Of a stretch of 64,000 nucleotides of DNA, positions 52,818 through 64,000 are shown piece after piece. The stretch lies in assembly GCF_048593235.1 (NCBI RefSeq), contig NC_133622.1:251228055-251292054 (forward strand). The letters run 5' to 3'. The position numbers and the translations under genes were made by a program. Positions within the stretch are counted from its first letter, which is position 1. Every line of letters begins with the position of its first letter. The notes under the pieces are model-generated. The model was not told the origin of the DNA. It saw only the letters and a program-made list of their open reading frames with translations, and searched no databases. Source of the stretch: Sminthopsis crassicaudata (lineage: Eukaryota).

Positions 52818-55800
52818 TCACTTCTTGTAATCTTCTTCTCCGGCCTGAGAGGAAGGAGGGGGGGGGTCAGGGCTGAGCCAGAGGAACCCGCCACCCCCAG
52901 GGTCCCCAGCTCACCTCGAAAACCCTGTCGATGATCTCATCGATGACGGCCGCCTGCGAGCGGAACACCTGCTGGTGGTGCTCCACGGCCGCCATCAGCT
53001 GCAGGTAGTGGAACAATTGGTTCTGCTGTCTGGGAGACAGAGGCACAGGGGGCCCTCAGCTGGGGGGGCAGCTCCCCAGAACGGGGACCCCCGGGCTTTC
53101 CTCTGGCAGCTTGTGCGAGGATTATTGCTCCCCGGTTACGGACCAGGAAACTGAGGGCCACAGAGGAGAGCGGGCTTGCTCCAATGGCAGAGGACCAGAG
53201 CTGCCAGAGCTGGGGGACATGCAGGGGCACACAGGGCGTGTCTAGAGGGGCAGCAGCAGGGGGTCTCCTCGGCTGTCCCACCCCCACAGCCTTCTCCGAC
53301 ACTGGTGGGGCCCAAGAGCCGTGGGCCCAGGCTCCCAGCCTCGCTGAGCGGCTGCTCCAGAATGAGGCTGCGCGCCAGGTGACTGGGCTCTGAGGTCCCC
53401 TCCCAGCTCGCACTCTGTTCTCTGATTTTCCATGTTCTAAGGCCCCCCCCCGCTCTGACATCGTCTGCTCTCTAAGGGGCCCCCAGCTTTGATAGGCCCC
53501 TTCCAATTCTACCATTTCTGGTTCCAAGCCCTCCCCATGCCGAGGTTCTTTGTTCTCTGTTTTCGAGTCTCCCAGGCCCAAAGTTTGACTGTTCTACAAA
53601 CCATTAAGGTTGGGCTGGAAAACCCTTCTGCCCCCCAAGCCAGACAAGCTGGGGGCCGGGCAGAGACCTCTCTGTCTCAGAAGGGGGCCCAGGAGTGGGG
53701 CACGGCGCAGGCTGCCGCCTTTAGACCCAGGACCCTTCCTTGCAGCCTTTTAGGCTCCCCCCTCAAGGGAAGCTCAGCCCCTGGGGATGGGGAGGGCTCA
53801 GAGCATGAAGGAGCCTTCAGATTTTAGGAGAAAGTGGGAACACTGTTCCCACAATACTCTCCCCCACTAACTATCCTAGCCCCAGGGATAGCCGGCATCC
53901 TGGATCCCAGACGCCTGTGCCTTAGGGGATGCAGTTCAGAGCACTGAGAAGCCTTGAGGTCGAAGGGTTGATTCGACTCCTGATCCTGAGCCTTTTCCCC
54001 ATTTCTGACCCAAGGCAAGCTCCTTTCCCATTCTGGGCCTCAGTTTACCCTTTATAAAATGAGGGCCCCATCTCCCCAGTGACTCAAGTTCCTAAGGGCC
54101 AAAGCCATTTCTTTTCCCTTAGCCCAGAGCCTCAGGCCCCCAGGTCCTTCCCCCAGTGGCTCCTGCCTCCTTTCCCCTCTTGGTCCACTGACCCCCCTGA
54201 CCCTGGTCTTCCTGACGGCTCCCCAAGCGCCCAGCCCCCGGAGCTTCTCCTTACGATTCTGTCAGGTCCCCATATTTTTTCTCAATTATCTTCATTTGTA
54301 GAGAAGTTCCGCTCAAATTCTCCTCCGGTTCTGTGAAGAGAGGTGGCCAGAAAATGGGGGAGAGGCCAGGGTCCAGGCTGATGGGAGGGGGTTCCAGCAG
54401 GGCCTCTGGGCCTGGAAATGCCCCTCTCCGGCACCGGCTGCCTCCGGGAGTCTAGGAGGCTCAAGAAAGGGGGGGACGTAGCCAGCGGGTTCCGAGGCGT
54501 CGATACCTTTCTCGAGGATGGTCAGCGACTCGTCCAGAAGGCGCTCGTGCATCCGGGCCACTTTCTGGGGAGCCAATTGGAGGAGAGGAGTCACTTCTTC
54601 CCTCCCCGGAGAGAGTCCTAGGGGAAGGAGGTGGTCTCCCTGGCAGGGGTGGAGGCCCTGGGGGGGGGGGTGGCTTGCATCCTTGGCTAAATGCCTGTCT
54701 GGCTGTTTCTGTCCTGGAGGGCGCTCAGGGGAGGTTGGGATGAAAACAAGAGGAAAACACGGGCTTTCGTCAGAGGGACTGCAATGGAGGGTGTGGGCTG
54801 CGCAACCTGGGATGTGGGCGTCCATGGGACTTGGTGGGGACCCTCAGCCCTTGACCCCTCGCTGGGACGGGGGCTGCAGCCTGGGAGCCTTCCCTCCCCC
54901 AGCCCAGGACTAGGCCGGCAGAGAAATGACACAGGGCAGGTGGAGCTCCTGGCTGCGGAGGCCATCTTTCTGGCCGGGGCCCCTAGTAAAGCTGGCGTCC
55001 CCCTCAGCTCCATGGCTGGCACATAGTGGGTATTGCCACCCCCGTACCTTCTGCTTCTCCTTTTCCAGTCCCTTGAGTAAGGCCATCTGGAAGTTGTCCA
55101 CCAGCACCGCGATCACCAGGCTACAAGACACGGGATGAGGTCTGAGGCCCCGGGAGCAGGGGCAGGGCCACACAGGGAGGGCATGGGGGGCAGGGGCTCC
55201 CCGGCGGACTCCTAGGCAGAACTGGGGCTGAGCTGGGGCTTGTCTGAGGAGAGGGGCACGGGCCTGAGGCCCAGAAGAGGAGGTTGGGAAGGCCCTGGGG
55301 GGGAGGGGGGCAGCCAGGGACTGGGGAGCCAGGGTGGGGAGGGGAGAGGGGGCTTGGTTTCTCACTTGAGGAAAATGAAGTATTGTATAATAATGTAGAT
55401 CATGAGGATGGGAACGATGTACCAGGCACCTGGGGGAGGAAATTTTGTACTCAGAGACTGAGGCAAGTCATGGGAAGGATGCCCATAGCTGGAGAGGAGC
55501 AAGAGGGGGGTGGGAAGTGGGGGACTACCCCCTGAGAGTTTATCATCTTAATTTTTCTTTCTAATTGGATGCTGTCACTTTTCTGGATCAGCCCTCTTTG
55601 AATTTTTTTTTATTAATTTTATAATTATAACATTTTTTTGACAGTACATATGCATAGGTAATTTTTTTTTTTACAACATTATCCCTTGTACTCCTTTCTG
55701 TTCCAAATTTTTCCCCTCCTTCCCTCCACCCCCTCCCCTAGATGGCAGGCATTCCCATACGTATTAAATATCTTATAGTATATCCCAGGTACAATATATA

Positions 55801-58800
55801 TGTGCAGAACCGGATTTTGTTGTTGTTGTTGTTGTTGTTGCAAAGGAAGAATTGTATTCGGAAGCCCCCTTTGAATTTTGCATTCTGGGCCACAGTCCCC
55901 ATTGTCTCACCCTAGTTACCACTCCTGCTCCGAAGCTCCCAAGACCGGTGCAACTTCCCACCTTGCTGGACCCCAACCCCCCTCCAAGGCCCCTTCCCGC
56001 TACCTTTCGCTCGGCTGGACAAGTAGATGAGGGACCAGTCATCCAGCGTGAGCATAGTAAAAAGTGTGAAGATGGTGGTGAAGATGTTCTGGAAGCGCTT
56101 GGGGTCCGATTGGTTGAAGAGGGATCGGAATATCACTGAGAAGAAGACTGGGGAGGCTAAGGCGGCCCCAAGGCCCTTGCAGTGTTGGCCAGCCCTCCAC
56201 CTCTGCCCAGCCTCAGATGCCGCCCCCCCAGCCTCCCACCTCCTGTGGCCCTGCCATCCCCCTCCCTCCCCAGCTCCCTCCTGGGCAGATACAGAGGCAG
56301 GTGAACATCAGGACAAGGATGGCCCCGATGGATGGCAGCGACCTGGCCAGTGTCCCCGTCACCTCCTGGAGGTTGTTGAGGAAGCTGAAAGCAGGAGGAG
56401 ACGAGGCGGTCAGAGGGCCTGGCCAGGCTCCCCGGGGGCTTCAGAGAACCTTGGAATTAGGGAGGGTCTGAGGCCAAAGGCAAGGGGTCAGGGCAGGGAG
56501 ACCCCCTTAGAGCCCAGGGTGGAGAACGGCTGACCTAGGAGAAGAGGAGAAAAAGCTGGGAGGAACCTTGGAGCTGAGGACCTAGAACCCAGAAAACCCT
56601 AGATTTCCAGGGAGAAGCTGCCTAGCGGGCTTGTAACCCAATCCTTCCATTTTATAGATGGGGAAACTGAGGAATGTGGCTATTCATTCAGGAATAAGGT
56701 CATAGATTCGCATCTAGAAGAGTCATTTAGAATCATCTGTTAATTCAGTGGCTCTCAGACTTTGGTTCTTGGCGTCTTTTTGTGATTAAAAATTATTGAG
56801 GATCGTCCAAAGAGCTTTTGATTTTGTGGGTTCTTTTTGTGGGATCCAAGAGCCCAGCTGGCCCTCACCTGAGCCTGCGGAGCACCATGACGGCCCTCAG
56901 TGCTCGGAGGCTTTTGAAGATCTTGAGGATGCCGAAGACGGTCTTGCTGTGGGCCATTCTTGTGACAGACGAGAAGTAGATCTGCTTGAGTATGAAGTCC
57001 ACCATGGCCATGACCATGATGAAGAAATCTGAGGGGGCAGGGGCACAGCGCCCATCTCAAGAGCCCGCCCTGCAAAGCTCCAGCCCCTCATGGTGCAGGT
57101 GACCTGCCTCCCTTAGGCTGGGGAAGCACCCACCCCTCTTCTAGCGCTTGAACCTCCCCAGTCACCCTGGGAGAGAGTTACCTCAGGCGTTATATGCATG
57201 AGGAAGCTGGGATTTAAGAAAAATGAGCTGTCTGGGGGTTGCATGGTTGGTCAGTGCTGAAGGTGGAATTTGCACCCAGGTCTTCTGGGCTCTAGGATTC
57301 AGTGTTCTGACCACTAGCCAGGGGGTCTCCATCAGAAAAGCAAGCTCCTGGGCAAGGTGGCGGAACCTCTTTTCCCTAAATCTGGAGCCCCTATTGGTAC
57401 TCCCCCTCTATTCCATCCAGCCCCTTTCCCCAGCTGGAAGACCATTCCCTGCAGGACCTGCCAATTCATTACTACCGCCACTCCATGGCGGGTTCCTCCC
57501 CTGCTTGTTCCTAACCTCCTCCAACCCTCCTCCCATCCAAGCCCTCCCCACCTCACCCACCTAGGCTGTTCCAAGAATCAAAGTAGCCTATTCCCATGAC
57601 TATGATCTTTAGGAAAGCCTCCATGAAGTAGATGCAGAGGAAGATCGAGTCAAAAGCTGTGAAGTACCATTCTGTGGGGAGGGGGGGGGGAGATCCTCCA
57701 TGTCAGTGCAGGTCTCAGCCCCCACACACACTTCCTCCCTCTGCCCTGACCCAACCACCTCCTGGCTCTCCTCAGGCAGGATTCCCAGTAACCCCGAGGA
57801 ATCGTCTTTCTAGGACAAATAGTCTTCTGACAGTTATATCTCCCTCTTAGATATTAAATCCCAAATGACATGTTCCGGATTGACTTAACAGTCGCTTTAT
57901 TTTTCTTTCAAGATATAAGTGGGCTGAAATTCCCCCATTCTCTTCCCCTTTCCCTTTATTCTCATCTTCCTCCCCCGCTCTTTTTCCTCCTCTTCCTCCT
58001 CCTCCAGGAAGCTGGAGACGGAGCAGCTAGTCCTAATGGGCTCCCTGGTCACTTCTAGCGGCCCCCCGAGTTTCAGAACCAGACCGGATCAGGTAGCGTC
58101 TCTCTCAGCCCCTGCCAAGGATGCTCACCTCCCCAGATCTCCACCTCAGCAAAGGTCTGGACCACCAGGATGATGGTGTTTAAACAGACCACGATGAAGA
58201 TGAAGATTTCAAAGCCGAGGCTCTCCACCAGGACGGCCAGCATGGACTGGATGTGGAGAAAGACTTCAAAGATCTTCCAGCAGCACTTGTGGAGGAGCTC
58301 GTTGGTGGCCATCTGCTTCTTGTGGGTCCGCTGCATCCTCACTACAAGGTGGGAGTTTGGGACAGAAGGAGGTCAGGCCCTGGGCACTGACTGTGCCGAG
58401 CCTCATTCTGCTCGGTGGGCGCCCCGACGGGGGCTCGGAGATCATCAGTAACCGAGCGGGCGGCAGCTCTGGCACCGTCCCCGTCAGAGAGGCAGACGGG
58501 CATGCGGCCCCTGGCTCCCTCTCAGACTCACCTACTTAAATCTGGAAGAGACCGACCCCTTCACTGTACACAGAGAATATGAGCCGTGATGTGAAGGAGC
58601 CTCTGCCTGCCGGGCCCCAGCCTGGCTTTTAAAGTGTAACACAAGACAATGGGAGGGCAGCCCCAAAGACACTTGGGGGAGGGCTTAGGCCATATTAATG
58701 CTGGGCACAAGGGCACCAAGCCAAACACTGGGCAGCGATGCTTTTCTGTCTTGAGATCAGGAACAGCCGTGCCCTTCACAGCACCCTAATATTCCCTTGA

Positions 58801-59216
58801 CTCTGACTGAGATAGAGGTTGGGGAGCCGTGACACACTTCCACTGGCTCCATCAGAGTGCCCGAAGGGCTCCAGGGAGCAGGATCCAGAAGCGGGTACTC
58901 CTGGGTGGAAGGGAGGGGCCGAGCCGGGGTTCCCAGGCCTAGGGATCGATAGGCGGATTGTCTTACTTCTCCTCATCTTTAGGCGGTGATCTTGTTCCCA
59001 GTTTTGCCCCATGGAGCTGTACGATGGCTGAATTCGGCTGCTACTTCGAGAGGGCTTGCTCTTTAGGCTCCAGGATCGGGGAGTGTGCTTCATATGCACA
59101 GTTCTGCTATGTGACACACCAGAGGCAATGGAAGAGGGTGCTGGAAGAGTAGCAGCCTGGGACTCTGGGGTCTCGACCTCCCTCCGGATCTCCTCTGGAA
59201 CCGTTAAGTAATTCAT
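52818..59216 (-). CDS. CATSPER1: Cation channel sperm-associated protein 1, 12 coding exons, about 460 aa
   Basis: Minus-strand exons: 59216-58967, 58341-58129, 57671-57561, 57028-56869, 56384-56293, 56147-56004, 55429-55366, 55120-55048, 54564-54507, 54330-54255, 53029-52915, 52844-52818 (1383 nt, GT-AG, phases consistent). Peptides: S1 FEIFIFIVVCLNT, S4 LKIFKSLRALRA, pore FTMLTLDDWSLIY, S6 IIIQYFIFLNLVIAVLVDNF, C-terminus AGEEDYKK-stop. The start codon and first exon are less certain than exons 2-12. Confidence 0.92.
55605..55860 (-). mobile_element. LINE-1 3' UTR fragment with (TTG)n, in CATSPER1 intron 6
   Basis: Poly(T)-led CATATGCATAGGTAATT...CCCCTAGATGGCAGG is closely similar to the 43290 element and to the reverse complement of 61700-61920. 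Confidence 0.7.
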
Positions 59217-59610
59217 CTTGAAAAGGAACTCTGGAACTGACACGAGAGTGACAGATGATTGGCCTGGGTACCTCCAGACCCGGTTCTTCTCGCCCTCCCC
59301 AACCTCTCATCCGCAACTCTCCTTACCTCAGTTCATTCAATGGACTTGTGGGGTCTCACATTCTGTGGAGGGACCTGGTTGTTTCCAGGGAGACGGTTCT
59401 GTGATGTAAGGCCTGGCTCCTTCCACTAGAGTGCCTTTCACAGAATCCTAGAATCTCAGAGAACATCAAAGGTCACCAGAACCTGGCAAATCGTCATCTA
59501 TAATCTTGCTGACCTCTAGGAAAGGGAGCGCAATGATAATGCACTCAGGAAGGTCTGAGTTCAAATTTGGCCTCACATTCGCTGTGCCCCCCAGTGCATC
59601 AGTAGGAATA

Positions 59611-60740
59611 ACACTGGTAATAGTAGCAGCAGCAGGAATAATAGTGGTAATAGTAGCAGCAGCAGGAATAATAGTAGTAATAGCAGCAGCAGCAGGAATA
59701 ATAGTGGTAATAGTAGCAGCAGCAGGAATAATAGTAGTAATAGCAGCAGCAGCAGGAATAATAGTGGTAATAGCAGCAGCAGCAGGAATAATAGTAGTAA
59801 TAGTAACAGCATCAGGAATAATAGTGGTAATAGTAGCAGCATCAGGGATAACAGTGGTAATAGCAGCAGCAGCAGGAATAATAGTAGTAATAGCAGCAGC
59901 AGCAGGAATAATAGTGGTAATAGTAGCAGCAGCAGGAATAATAGTGGTAATAGCAGCAGCAGCAGGAATAATAGTAGTAATAGTAACAGCATCAGGAATA
60001 ATAGTGGTAATAGTAGCAGCATCAGGGATAACAGTGGTAATAGCAGCAGCAGCAGGAATAATAGTAGTAATAGTAACAGCATCAGGAATAATAGTGGTAA
60101 TAGTAGCAGCAGCAGGAATAATAGTGGTAATGGTAACAGCATCAAGAATAATAGTAGTAATAGTAACAGCATCAGGAATAATAGTGGTAATAGTAGCAGC
60201 AGCAGGAATAATAGTAGTAATAGTAACAGCATCAGGAATAATAGTGGTAATAGTAACAGCATCAGGAATAATAGTGGTAATGGTAACAGCATCAAGAATA
60301 ATAATGGTAATAGCAGCAGCAGCAGGAATAATAGTAGTAATAGTAACAGCATCAGGAATAATAGTGGTAATAGTAGCAGCATCAGGGATAACAGTGATAA
60401 TAGCAGCAGCAGCAGGAATAATAGTAGTAATAGTAACAGCATCAGGAATAATAGTGGTAATAGTAGCAGCATCAGGGATAACAGTGGTAATAGCAGCAGC
60501 AGCAGGAATAATAGTAGTAATAGTAACAGCATCAGGAATAATAGTGGTAATGGTAACAGCATCAAGAATAATAATGGTAATAGCAGCAGCAGCAGGAATA
60601 ATAGTAGTAATAGTAACAGCATCAGGAATAATAGTGGTAATAGTAGCAGCATCAGGAATAATAGTGGTAATGGTAACAGCATCAAGAATAATAGTAGTAA
60701 TAGTAGCAGCATCAGGGATAACAGTGGTAATAGCAGCAGC
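59611..60740. repeat. 30-bp-unit tandem array (about 37.5 units; ATAGTGGTAATAGTAGCAGCAGCAGGAATA and variants)
   Basis: A strict 30-bp register with no indels holds from 59641 to 60720. Units are built from AAT/AGT/AGC/GGT triplets. Confidence 0.97.
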
Positions 60741-61699
60741 TATTATAATCTAGGCTACCCCCCCATTTTCTTGACAATCCCTCTCCCAGCCTCTTCCTAC
60801 TCATCCAGGCTAGACCTGGGGTCCTAGAGCCAAGTATAATCCTTAGAAATGAAAGTCTGGTCCTTTCCTGGCAGGATCAAGTCTAAAACACCCAGGAAAA
60901 AGGGGAGCCTCCAATCCCTGAAAGGAGCAGGGATGGGGAAATAATTCCCACATTCCCCCAGAGAACTTGCAGGGCTCTAAGCACAGAGGAGATGGCAAAG
61001 ATCCATGACATCACTGAAGGAAGGTCTCTTCTCTCTTTGAAGGTCATGAGGTTGAGGAACCTTACCCCTCCCCTTTTTTTGACCAAGGCCGACACACTTT
61101 GAATCCAAACCAACTACCACTGGGCCCTGTAGATGTAGGAGCTTCCATTCTCTTCATGTACACAAGTGTGTACAAGACAGATTTGATAAACCAAAGGCTT
61201 TTTTTTTTTTTTTTTTGAAAGGAGGTACTCATTTCTGTTTTGAGCATGCAGTTTAGGAGAGATCTCCTGAGCTGAGTTTTGAAGAAACTGAATAGTTCCA
61301 AAAGGCAGAGATTAAGAGGGAATGAATTCCAGGCATGGGGAGCAAACTGTACAGAAGCATGGCACCCTTAGATGGTGTCTTATGGGAAGAACAGTGAGAA
61401 TAACAGTTTGGTTGGGTCAGTGAATATGAGAAGGAGACTGATGTCCAATAATGTTTAGAAACATTATTTGGGGGTCAAGGAATGAAGAGCTTTCAATGGC
61501 AAACAGAGGAGTTTGTATCTGAACCTAAAAGATAAAGAAAAACACAGGATTTTCTGAGGAGAGGAGGACCATAGTTTGACCTAGTTTTAGGAATATTGTT
61601 TTGGCAGCTGGGTGGACAATGAATTTGGAAGAAGAGTCAGTGGTCAAGAAACTATATGCCATTTTTGACTTCCTTCACAGGTTAATTATACACTATTTC

Positions 61700-61920
61700 A
61701 AAGTCCAATTCTTTTTGTTCAGCAAAACAACTGTTTGGATATTATACATATATTGTATTTAACATATACTTTAACATATTGAACATGTATTGGTCAACCT
61801 GCCATCTGGGGGAGGGGATGGGGGGAAGGAAGGGAAAAGTTGGAGCAAAAGGTTTGGCAATTGTCAATGCTGGAAATCACCCATGTATACATCTTGTAAA
61901 TGAAAAGCTATAATAAAAAA
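61700..61920 (+). mobile_element. LINE-1 3' UTR end with A-tail
   Basis: CTGCCATCTGGGGGGAGGGG...GTCAATGCTGGAAATCACCCATGTATACATCTTG...AATAAAAAA. Confidence 0.7.
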
Positions 61921-61973
61921 GCCAACTATGATGTAAAAAAAAAAGAAACTATACGCCAAATTTCTATAATCGT

Positions 61974-62965
61974 GTTGGATGATATAACGGGATGAAAATG
62001 TTGGATGAAAATAATATCAAATCTGCATAAGCTAATTTAAAGAGCATATCTGATAGTATATATATAGAAAGACAAAGGTATACTAGTTATATATTAAGTT
62101 AAAAGATCCTTTGACTTTTCAATGTTATGAGGATAATTAACTGTCTGTTCTGTGTTAAGGAATACATGTCTAGTAGGAGATGTTCAGACAAAGGTTATAT
62201 ATTAAGTTAAAAGATCCTTTGACTTTTCAATGCTATGAGGATAATTAACTGTCTGTTCTGTGTTAAGGAATACATGTTTAGTAAGAGATGTCCAGATGTG
62301 TGTGCATTTGAACAGAGCTACAAGTTAAATGGTTTTATTGTGAATCTCATATGCATTATTTTAAACTTTAAACTGGGATTACTTAAAATTGTTATTCACT
62401 GTGTTTATGTATCCATCCCAGAATCTTTTGTTAACTTTAGATAAATCTGGCAACTTTAGAAGAATTTGTTTATATATTGGAGTACATCTTATTATTCTGG
62501 CTTCTGATTTCTGTTTGTAGACATAGAGCGGTGTACAGGTGATGGATATTGGTGATAAGTAAAATTGTGAATTCCCTGGTCTAGAAAGATTCCATAAAGT
62601 TAGAGTTAACTTTCATGTCCTTACCTGTTGAGTAGCAAAGTAAATTGGAAGGTTCTTTTGAGATCAGTTTTGTAGGAAACTTCTACACTTGGCCTGAGCT
62701 GAAGAACAGACCAGAGCCACAGGACTGCAGGAGAAGTATCTAGAGGAAGAAGTAGACATCTACTTTTTCCTTTTCATCTTTTATCTATAAGATCCAATTA
62801 TCAAAGGGGTTTGCCCCCTTTATTTTTGTCAAGCCATTTTTGTCTGCCATTTTTTCATTTTTTCCTCTCATGTTGTCTCCCCTCACAAGTCCCAAGAAAC
62901 CCTTGATAAAATATTTGTCTTTGATCTAAAAGAAAATGGCCAAACGACCATTCTTTTTAATAACC
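61974..62965. mobile_element. AT-rich LTR-like segment containing a 107-bp tandem duplication
   Basis: Begins TGTTGG and can be closed at ...AATAACCA; about 1 kb long. Internal direct repeat at 62087 and 62194. No internal retroviral ORF is visible and the family was not recognised. Confidence 0.3.
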
Positions 62966-62992
62966 AGTTGGCCTTGTTAATAAAATGATTAA

Positions 62993-63130
62993 GGAGCAGC
63001 TAGGTGGGGCAGTGGATAGAGCACCAGCCTTGAATTCAGGAGGACCTGAGTTCAAATCTGATCTCAGATACTTAACACTTCCTTCCTAGCTGTGTGACCC
63101 TGGGCAAGTCACTTAACCCCAGCCTGGGGG
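62993..63130 (+). mobile_element. Young core SINE (WSINE1-like) running into the gap
   Basis: Nearly the same sequence as 42589-42720. Confidence 0.88.
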
Positions 63131-63313
63131 NNNNNNNNNNNNNNNNNNNNNNNNNNNNNNNNNNNNNNNNNNNNNNNNNNNNNNNNNNNNNNNNNNNNNN
63201 NNNNNNNNNNNNNNNNNNNNNNNNNNNNNNNNNNNNNNNNNNNNNNNNNNNNNNNNNNNNNNNNNNNNNNNNNNNNNNNNNNNNNNNNNNNNNNNNNNNN
63301 NNNNNNNNNNNNN
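63131..63313. other. Assembly gap (183 N)
   Basis: Run of N. Confidence 1.
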
Positions 63314-64000
63314 AAACCCTGGGTTAAATGCTGGAAATACAAATACTATGAGCAAAAAAAAACCACAAAACCGGACCTCAAGGAGTCTTCAATCTAATGG
63401 GGAAAGACAAGACCTACAAAGAAACTGGAGGGAGGAGGTATCTAGCTAGGGTAGGGGGGAGAAGCTTGGATTACATCCTGGGGAGAAATGAAGTGATGAC
63501 CAGTCCAAGATCCTTCAGAGGAGGGTCTGGGAGAATCCTCCACCCTCCAATCACAGGGAGAGGGCCCAAGGGTAGAGGGTACTTCTGAGGTATGAATTAC
63601 AGGGCTGAGCTGGCAAGGTGAAGAGATTTCTGGGGCCTGATGGAGAATCCCGGAGTATACTTTTGTGAGAAATGAATGAGAAGAGAGGCTAGAGGAAATG
63701 AAATCAGGAAAAAAAAAATGAATGAATTGATGAAATTTAGATTAAGTACTGTATTGAATTAATGAATGAATGAGTGAAAAAAAGTATGCATTAAGCATTG
63801 ACTATGTGTAAAGCACTGTGCTAAAGGGTGGAGATAAAAGAGACCAGGCAAATACTTCCTCCCCTCAAGTAAGAACTTCCAATGGGAGAAAGGTCTCAGC
63901 TGCCATTTGGATGGAGGAGTCCTGTGGTCCTTAGCCAAGCAGAAGGTCAGGGCTATTCTCTCCTGATGTTGAACCACCGGACAGGGCCCAAGACTTTGGG

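What the first reader, a model, noticed from the sequence alone, without database searches (positions are those of the whole stretch)
58967..59330. CATSPER1 appears to lack the His-rich N-terminal domain (83-aa first exon, 4 His)
Seen: exon 2 needs a phase-1 donor. AAGATGAGGAGAA|GTAAG at 58967 supplies it and closes an ORF starting at ATG 59216 (A at -3): MNYLTVPEEIRREVETPESQ...DHRLKMRR. An in-frame TGA lies upstream in the unspliced sequence. A plausible 90-bp intron (59326-59237) joins an upstream exon that also ends in an in-frame TGA, so both readings make 59216 the start. No CAC/CAT-rich exon is visible up to 64000. Predicted protein: 460 aa, versus about 780 aa in human. Established: the human/mouse exon 1 encodes a long His-rich, rapidly evolving domain proposed for pH/Zn sensing. 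Inference: that domain is a eutherian elaboration or was lost here, implying different pH gating of sperm Ca2+ entry. Together with the S4 changes this is the best candidate for new biology in the window.
Basis: partly seen in the sequence, partly recalled or inferred. Interest (0 to 1): 0.8.

Follow-up and report, generated by a model that had tools for sequence, protein, structure and literature searches.

The report
Dunnart CATSPER1 has short, His-poor N-terminus
The sperm calcium-channel gene CATSPER1 of the fat-tailed dunnart really does start with a short 83-residue first exon that lacks the histidine-rich domain of placental mammals, but this is the ancestral state shared by all marsupials, monotremes and reptiles, and it is already annotated and published.

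Summary
The window is 100% identical to the Sminthopsis crassicaudata assembly. The NCBI protein for its CATSPER1 (460 aa) is reproduced exactly by 12 GT-AG exons on the minus strand. Exon 1 runs from ATG 59216 to the phase-1 donor at 58967 (83 codons plus 1 nt, 4 His). In-frame TGAs lie upstream in both the unspliced and the 90-bp-spliced reading, and no His-rich ORF exists up to 64000.

Mouse Catsper1 has the same 12 exons and phases. Only exon 1 differs (934 nt, 311 aa, 55 His), so the His-rich domain is an expansion inside exon 1, not a separate exon.

Ten marsupials, platypus, echidna and a skink all start M[N/D]YLTVP and have 81-96 residues with 0-6 His before exon 2. The domain is therefore a eutherian gain, not a loss here.

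This is already known. The protein is annotated, and a 2026 PLoS Biology paper tabulates short His-poor N-termini for five marsupials and platypus.

The inference of different pH gating is weak, because sea urchin CatSper is alkalinisation-gated without the domain and EFCAB9-CatSperζ accounts for pH dependence in mouse.

The parts
58967..59216 (-). CATSPER1 coding exon 1: 250 nt, 83 codons plus 1 nt, with a phase-1 donor GTAAGA. It encodes a basic (pI 10.6), Ser-rich (19%) N-terminus with 4 His.
   Evidence: tblastn of 10 marsupial orthologues starts at 59216
59307..59309 (-). In-frame TGA 31 codons upstream of the ATG in the unspliced sequence; it closes the reading frame.
   Evidence: read from the sequence; the ORF table lists the frame as open only from 59243
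59237..59326 (-). The signals are present but its use is unverified. The upstream exon would end in an in-frame TGA at 59330-59328.
   Evidence: sequence; no RNA evidence obtained
58342..58966 (-). Intron 1 (625 nt).
   Evidence: Runs X6, X7, X9 and X10 hold 0.20-0.32 of the words of 58000-59450 but less than 0.05 of the words of this intron.
58129..58341 (-). Exon 2 (213 nt): pre-S1 helix and S1. It matches mouse CatSper1 residues 313-380.
   Evidence: (E 4e-14 to PDB 7eeb_A)
52818..57671 (-). Exons 3-12: 57671-57561, 57028-56869, 56384-56293, 56147-56004, 55429-55366, 55120-55048, 54564-54507, 54330-54255, 53029-52915, 52844-52818 (including the stop). All are GT-AG, with the same phases as mouse.
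   Evidence: Pfam Ion_trans at residues 127-357, E 3.5e-34
59604..60740 (.). 30-bp minisatellite (38 copies) about 390 bp upstream of the ATG. It is not coding here.
   Evidence: orthologous arrays in Antechinus (41 copies) and Sarcophilus (6 copies)

Best explanation
This is the intact, orthologous CATSPER1 gene of the fat-tailed dunnart (Sminthopsis crassicaudata), and its short first exon is the true 5' coding exon. The N-terminal cytoplasmic region is about 110 residues. Residues 1-69 are a basic, Ser-rich, predicted-disordered stretch. Residues 70-109 form a long pre-S1 helix that spans the exon 1/2 junction. This is the ancestral amniote architecture. In the eutherian stem lineage the middle of exon 1 expanded by about 200-450 residues of His-rich low-complexity sequence, between the conserved start (M-D/N-x-x-x-V/x-P-E) and the conserved end (D-H-x-x-K-x-R-K/R). 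The dunnart keeps both flanks, including the RR pair (R11, R12 = mouse R6, R7) and H90 (= mouse H317), but has no His-rich spacer. Shown: the gene model, exon homology, phylogenetic distribution and predicted disorder. Inferred: alkalinisation gating of the dunnart channel relies on the conserved EFCAB9(-CatSperζ) module and the channel core. Any function specific to the His-rich spacer (Zn2+ or pH buffering, temperature-dependent coupling between channel complexes, capacitation-linked N-terminal cleavage) is absent or reduced.
For: The window is 100% identical to GCA_048593235.1 CM109186.1. NCBI protein P0025 (460 aa) is rebuilt exactly from 12 GT-AG exons, with exon 1 at 59216-58967. Mouse has the same 12 exons and phases, with exon lengths 207/114/154/92/144/64/73/61/76/115/27 against 213/111/160/92/144/64/73/58/76/115/27. 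Only exon 1 differs, at 934 nt with 55 His. Exon 1 is 253, 259, 268 and 286 nt in Antechinus, Sarcophilus, Dromiciops and platypus, always 1 mod 3. Each has an in-frame stop upstream and no His-rich ORF in the 10 kb upstream. In ten marsupials, two monotremes and the skink Lerista, models starting M[N/D]YLTVP (MNFLSVP in Monodelphis) have 81-96 residues and 0-6 His before exon 2. Eutherian models starting MDQ typically have 200-450 residues and up to 27% His. Synteny is conserved: CST6-like cystatin lies downstream, and GAL3ST3 ends 3 kb upstream in platypus. AF2 predicts residues 1-69 at low confidence and 70-109 as a helix with pLDDT 83-94. Literature.
Against: Whether the NCBI model rests on RNA-seq is unknown to me. 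Exon 1 evolves fast: dN/dS is 0.33-0.79 against 0.22-0.33 for the rest, and its nucleotide identity among dasyurids (0.81-0.82) is below that of intron 1 (0.87-0.88). Conservation alone is therefore weak support for the middle of the exon. A Sarcophilus UniProt model of 491 aa uses a later donor, so minor isoforms are possible. The functional part is inference only.
Confidence: 0.9

Rival explanations
1. A His-rich coding exon lies further upstream (in the 63131-63313 gap or beyond the window) and is spliced into the acceptor at 59236, so the real protein is long.
For: The frame from acceptor 59236 to the ATG is open (sequence). There is no read-level RNA evidence. 183 bases are N.
Against: In mouse the His-rich part lies inside exon 1, downstream of the homologous start, not in a separate exon. 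The start MNYLTVPEE is conserved in 9 marsupials, and MDYLTVP in monotremes and a skink. No His-rich ORF occurs in 59216-64000 or in the 10 kb upstream in four other species. Platypus GAL3ST3 ends only 3 kb upstream. All annotation pipelines give 460-472 aa.
Confidence: 0.03
2. The therian ancestor had the His-rich domain and marsupials (or dasyurids) lost it secondarily.
For: Exon 1 is indel-prone and fast-evolving in both clades. Some eutherian database models are short.
Against: Platypus, echidna and the skink are short and His-poor. So are turtle, alligator, lizards and fish in PMC13674862 Table 1. A loss scenario needs at least three independent losses against one gain. Short eutherian models mostly lack the canonical start or are frame-shifted.
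Confidence: 0.04
3. Exon 1 is longer in a proportion of transcripts: read-through of the 58967 donor to a later donor, as in the 491-aa Sarcophilus model, giving an N-terminus about 30 residues longer.
For: The frame stays open to 58776. P0029 aligns to 58932-58861 at 83%.
Against: NCBI models of 9 marsupials use the 58967-equivalent donor. Runs that appear to hold only exons hold less than 5% of intron 1 words. This isoform would not add a His-rich domain in any case (6 His in 119 residues).
Confidence: 0.1

Closest known systems
Annotated CATSPER1 of Sminthopsis crassicaudata (NCBI, 460 aa; P0025)
   Same: Identical. The window encodes exactly this protein with the same start and the same 12 exons.
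   Different: Nothing.
Mouse CatSper1 (686 aa; PDB 7eeb chain A; P0089)
   Same: The same 12 coding exons and intron phases, and the same pore motif TLDDW. Exons 2-12 are 53-81% identical in tblastn pieces. The start and end of exon 1 are homologous, and H317 and R6/R7 have equivalents.
   Different: Mouse exon 1 is 934 nt (311 aa, 55 His, pI 7.1) against 250 nt (83 aa, 4 His, pI 10.6) in the dunnart. The dunnart lacks equivalents of H15 and H321 and has R-to-G and R-to-M changes in S4.
Short-N-terminus CatSper1 of other marsupials, platypus and reptiles, as tabulated in PMC13674862 Table 1 (opossum 107 aa/4 His, devil 141/7, koala 113/7, wombat 74/3, wallaby 113/8, platypus 112/4)
   Same: The same architecture and His content. 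The dunnart has 110 residues to S1, with 6 His and pI 10.3.
   Different: The dunnart is not in that table. The paper attributes N-terminal length to fertilisation temperature, not to clade.
Sea urchin CatSper (Seifert et al. 2015, as cited in bioRxiv 10.1101/459487)
   Same: It lacks a His-enriched N-terminus yet is opened by intracellular alkalinisation. It is a functional precedent for a His-poor CatSper1.
   Different: It is a distant orthologue from an external fertiliser. It was not examined here.

Membership tests
CATSPER1 (pore-forming alpha subunit 1 of the sperm CatSper channel) | Single six-transmembrane Ion_trans repeat | tested here: met
   Pfam PF00520 at residues 127-357, E 3.5e-34, 118.5 bits against a cutoff of 25
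CATSPER1 (pore-forming alpha subunit 1 of the sperm CatSper channel) | Ca2+-selectivity pore motif T-x-D-x-W | tested here: met
   FTMLTLDDWSLIY in P0025, encoded by exon 6 at 56147-56004
CATSPER1 (pore-forming alpha subunit 1 of the sperm CatSper channel) | Best sequence match is CatSper1 rather than CatSper2-4 or Cav | tested here: met
   The only PDB hits of exon 2 are CatSper1 chains 7eeb_A and 9ubw_A. All named hits of the marsupial orthologue are 'cation channel sperm-associated protein 1'.
CATSPER1 (pore-forming alpha subunit 1 of the sperm CatSper channel) | Orthologous gene structure and synteny | tested here: met
   12 exons with the same phases as mouse. A cystatin gene lies downstream in dunnart, devil, Antechinus, Dromiciops and platypus, and GAL3ST3 lies upstream in platypus.
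CATSPER1 (pore-forming alpha subunit 1 of the sperm CatSper channel) | Testis- or sperm-specific expression and assembly with CatSper2-4 | not testable with these tools
Opossum testis expression is reported in PMC8147001.
Eutherian-type CATSPER1 with His-rich N-terminal domain | Exon 1 of roughly 600-1400 nt encoding more than 10% His | tested here: not met
   Exon 1 is 250 nt with 4 His in 83 residues (4.8%). Mouse control: 934 nt, 17.7% His.
Eutherian-type CATSPER1 with His-rich N-terminal domain | Conserved flanks of the N-terminal domain (N-terminal RR, pre-S1 helix with the H317 equivalent) | tested here: met
   R11/R12 and H90 are present. The helix at 70-109 is predicted with pLDDT 83-94. 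The interface residues are named in PMC13674862.

The most novel reading that the evidence does not exclude
The His-rich N-terminal domain is a eutherian synapomorphy, and the published correlation of its length with fertilisation temperature is a clade effect. In the paper's own Table 1, r = -0.08 within 24 eutherians, while the pooled r = 0.51 reproduces the paper's value. Marsupials such as the dunnart would then be natural 'His-domain-less' CatSper animals. Their sperm channel should lack the His-mediated temperature/pH coupling and the capacitation-linked N-terminal cleavage proposed for mouse, and so should be gated measurably differently.
Probability: 0.3. Interest if true: 0.5.

Novelty: already known. 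Interest (0 to 1): 0.22.

Why it matters
As a finding it only re-derives an existing annotation and a published pattern, so it matters little in itself. Its use is comparative. A laboratory marsupial with a CatSper1 that keeps both conserved flanks of the N-terminal domain but has no His-rich spacer is a natural deletion mutant, and the channel cannot be expressed heterologously. Patch-clamp recordings from dunnart or opossum sperm could test whether the His-rich domain contributes to pH, Zn2+ or temperature gating. The stratified re-analysis also suggests that the published link between temperature and N-terminal length needs a phylogenetic correction.

Tried and rejected
I therefore saw no splice junctions or transcript ends.
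2. A PDB sequence search with the exon 1 read-through ORF found nothing at E up to 10. The N-terminus is too divergent from mouse for phmmer.
3. The search for homologous proteins with P0025:1-130, meant to catch short transcript-derived fragments spanning the exon 1/2 junction, found nothing.
4. The look-up of encoding contigs for P0025 gave only the genome record and no transcript contig.
5. The search of earlier findings by words gave nothing relevant.
6. I considered and rejected an upstream His-rich exon, secondary loss in marsupials, and the 30-bp minisatellite as hidden coding sequence. The minisatellite is separated from the ATG by in-frame stops in the dunnart.
7. L001 is the same genome and contains letters where the window has N (L001 1904-2086).

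Full report
WHAT IS THERE. The stretch lies at the 5' end of a minus-strand gene. Exon 2 (58130-58339) matches mouse CatSper1 residues 313-380 in PDB 7eeb_A (E 4e-14), and no other kind of protein in the PDB.

The window is 100% identical over 16.3 kb and 0.7 kb to GCA_048593235.1 CM109186.1, the Sminthopsis crassicaudata assembly. The NCBI protein 'cation channel sperm-associated protein 1 [Sminthopsis crassicaudata]' (P0025, 460 aa) is reproduced residue for residue by 12 exons of the window, all GT-AG. Exon 1 is 59216-58967 and exon 2 is 58341-58129.

THE OBSERVATION.
- The 83-codon ORF from ATG 59216 has four His, at residues 36, 41, 44 and 77.
- The donor is AAGATGAGGAGAA|GTAAGA, in phase 1.
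- The unspliced frame is closed by TGA at 59309-59307.
- The proposed 90-bp intron has a GTAAGG donor at 59326 and an AG acceptor at 59238-59237. It would join an exon that ends in TGA at 59330-59328 in frame (sequence).
- No frame on either strand of 59216-64000 reaches 9 His in 60 residues.

IS THE SHORT EXON THE REAL FIRST CODING EXON? Four lines of evidence say yes.

1. Mouse Catsper1, rebuilt the same way from its genome locus, has the same 12 coding exons with identical phases and near-identical lengths. The exception is exon 1, which is 934 nt (311 aa, 55 His). The His-rich domain is therefore not a separate exon that could have been missed upstream. It sits inside exon 1, between a homologous start (mouse MDQSSRRDE, dunnart MNYLTVPEEIRRE) and a homologous end (mouse ..EDHVQKRK|, dunnart ..QDHRLKMRR|).

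2. Exon 1 is 253, 259, 268 and 286 nt in Antechinus, Sarcophilus, Dromiciops and platypus. The length is always 1 mod 3. Each has an in-frame stop 14-79 codons upstream, and none has a His-rich ORF in the 10 kb upstream. In platypus the GAL3ST3 gene ends only 3 kb upstream.

3. Nine marsupial models begin MNYLTVPE (Monodelphis begins MNFLSVPE). Platypus, echidna and the skink Lerista edwardsae begin MDYLTVP.

4. Four runs from three studies (X6, X7, X9, X10) hold 0.20-0.32 of the sampled words of 58000-59450. That is what exons 1 and 2 with a short 5'UTR would give. The same runs hold less than 0.05 of the words of intron 1 alone. This is indirect evidence, because the kind of these runs is not on record.

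I could not get direct read evidence.

EVOLUTION. I measured the residues before the exon 2 anchor across all fetched orthologues.
- Marsupials, monotremes and the skink with the canonical start have 81-96 residues and 0-6 His.
- Eutherian models with the canonical MDQ start mostly have 200-450 residues and up to 27% His.

With sauropsids and monotremes as outgroups, one gain on the eutherian stem explains the pattern. A loss in marsupials would need several parallel losses.

The marsupial exon 1 is itself fast-evolving. Its dN/dS is 0.33-0.79, against 0.22-0.33 for exons 2-12. Its nucleotide identity among dasyurids is 0.81-0.82, lower than intron 1 at 0.87-0.88. The 300 bp upstream of the ATG is 0.91-0.92 identical. 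The first 14 residues and the last 25 or so are the conserved parts.

STRUCTURE AND LIKELY MECHANISM. AlphaFold2 on the marsupial/monotreme alignment predicts residues 1-69 at low confidence (about 50-60) with no secondary structure. Residues 70-109 form one helix with pLDDT 83-94, crossing the exon 1/2 junction into S1. The N-terminal region is basic (pI 10.3-10.6) and Ser-rich.

PMC13674862 models an inter-channel interface in mouse built from the two ends of the N-terminal domain (R6, R7, H15, H317, H321). The dunnart has R11/R12 and H90 (= H317) but no H321 or H15 equivalent. So the dunnart protein looks like the two conserved flanks joined by a short Ser-rich linker.

Two published results bear on pH gating. 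Alkalinisation opens sea urchin CatSper, which has no His-enriched N-terminus. Loss of EFCAB9-CatSperζ largely removes pH dependence in mouse. In opossum, Ca2+ influx sensitive to NNC 55-0396 is needed for hyperactivation, and the EFCAB9-CatSperζ interaction is conserved.

From these I infer that dunnart CatSper is still alkalinisation-gated through the conserved module. What it lacks is whatever the His-rich spacer adds in eutherians. This functional step is inference and was not tested.

WHAT IS KNOWN. The protein is annotated. Table 1 of PMC13674862 (October 2026) lists N-terminal length and His count for opossum (107 aa, 4 His), wombat (74, 3), devil (141, 7), koala (113, 7), tammar (113, 8) and platypus (112, 4), beside eutherians with 192-556 aa. 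The pattern is therefore published, although the text does not mention marsupials and ascribes the length to fertilisation temperature.

I re-analysed that table by clade.
- The pooled amniote correlation is r = 0.51, n = 34, P = 0.002, the same as the paper reports.
- Within the 24 eutherians it is r = -0.08.
- In the shared 34-36.5 C band, eutherian lengths (192-556 aa) and non-eutherian lengths (74-141 aa) do not overlap (Mann-Whitney P = 0.003).

Clade, not temperature, carries the signal in these numbers. A proper phylogenetic regression remains to be done.

VERDICT. The 'eutherian elaboration' interpretation is right, 'lost here' is wrong, and 'different pH gating' is unsupported. It is an already known, ordinary feature of non-eutherian CATSPER1. 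Its value is comparative: marsupial sperm are a natural test of what the His-rich domain does.

Noticed in passing
window 59604-60740; L004 8406-9619; L003 9448-9619: A 30-bp minisatellite sits about 380-390 bp upstream of the CATSPER1 ATG. It is orthologously conserved in dasyurids with very different copy numbers: 38 in Sminthopsis, 41 in Antechinus and 6 in Sarcophilus. The Trichosurus NCBI model (P0026, 516 aa) starts 50 residues upstream of the conserved MNYLTVP start, and about the first 40 of those residues (CCCCYYYRCYYYHRHYYHR...) look like a translation of such a repeat. That extension is probably an annotation artefact.
   Followed up: partly
The R-to-M change (AIRVL to A[I/V]MVL) is shared by all Australidelphia including Dromiciops. 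The didelphids (Monodelphis, Gracilinanus), echidna and eutherians keep R, and platypus has W.
   Followed up: partly
proteins P0071 (Ursus arctos), P0010, P0052, P0060 (baleen whales), P0043 (Equus przewalskii isoform), P0011, P0065, P0136: Many eutherian CATSPER1 database models have an N-terminus rich in Thr, Ile, Met and Pro (PTTM/GPTT repeats, 18-23% Thr, 0-5% His). P0071 (brown bear) switches mid-exon from a His-rich stretch into such repeats. This is the signature of the His-codon repeat read in another frame. Low His values for such species in comparative tables (for example brown bear at 5.5% in PMC13674862) may be model or assembly frameshifts rather than biology.
   Followed up: partly
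window 58967-59216 against L003, L004: Exon 1 is less conserved at the nucleotide level among dasyurids (0.81-0.82) than intron 1 (0.87-0.88) or the 300 bp upstream of the ATG (0.91-0.92). Its dS is about twice that of the rest of the gene. The short marsupial exon 1 is thus a local hot spot of change, as eutherian exon 1 is.
   Followed up: no
runs X1-X4 (study P1): Four small runs (650-850 million letters), guessed to be RNA, hold 82-98% of the words of intron 1 as well as the exons. That is far more than low-coverage DNA would give. They could be total or nascent RNA, intron retention, or an enrichment library.
   Followed up: no
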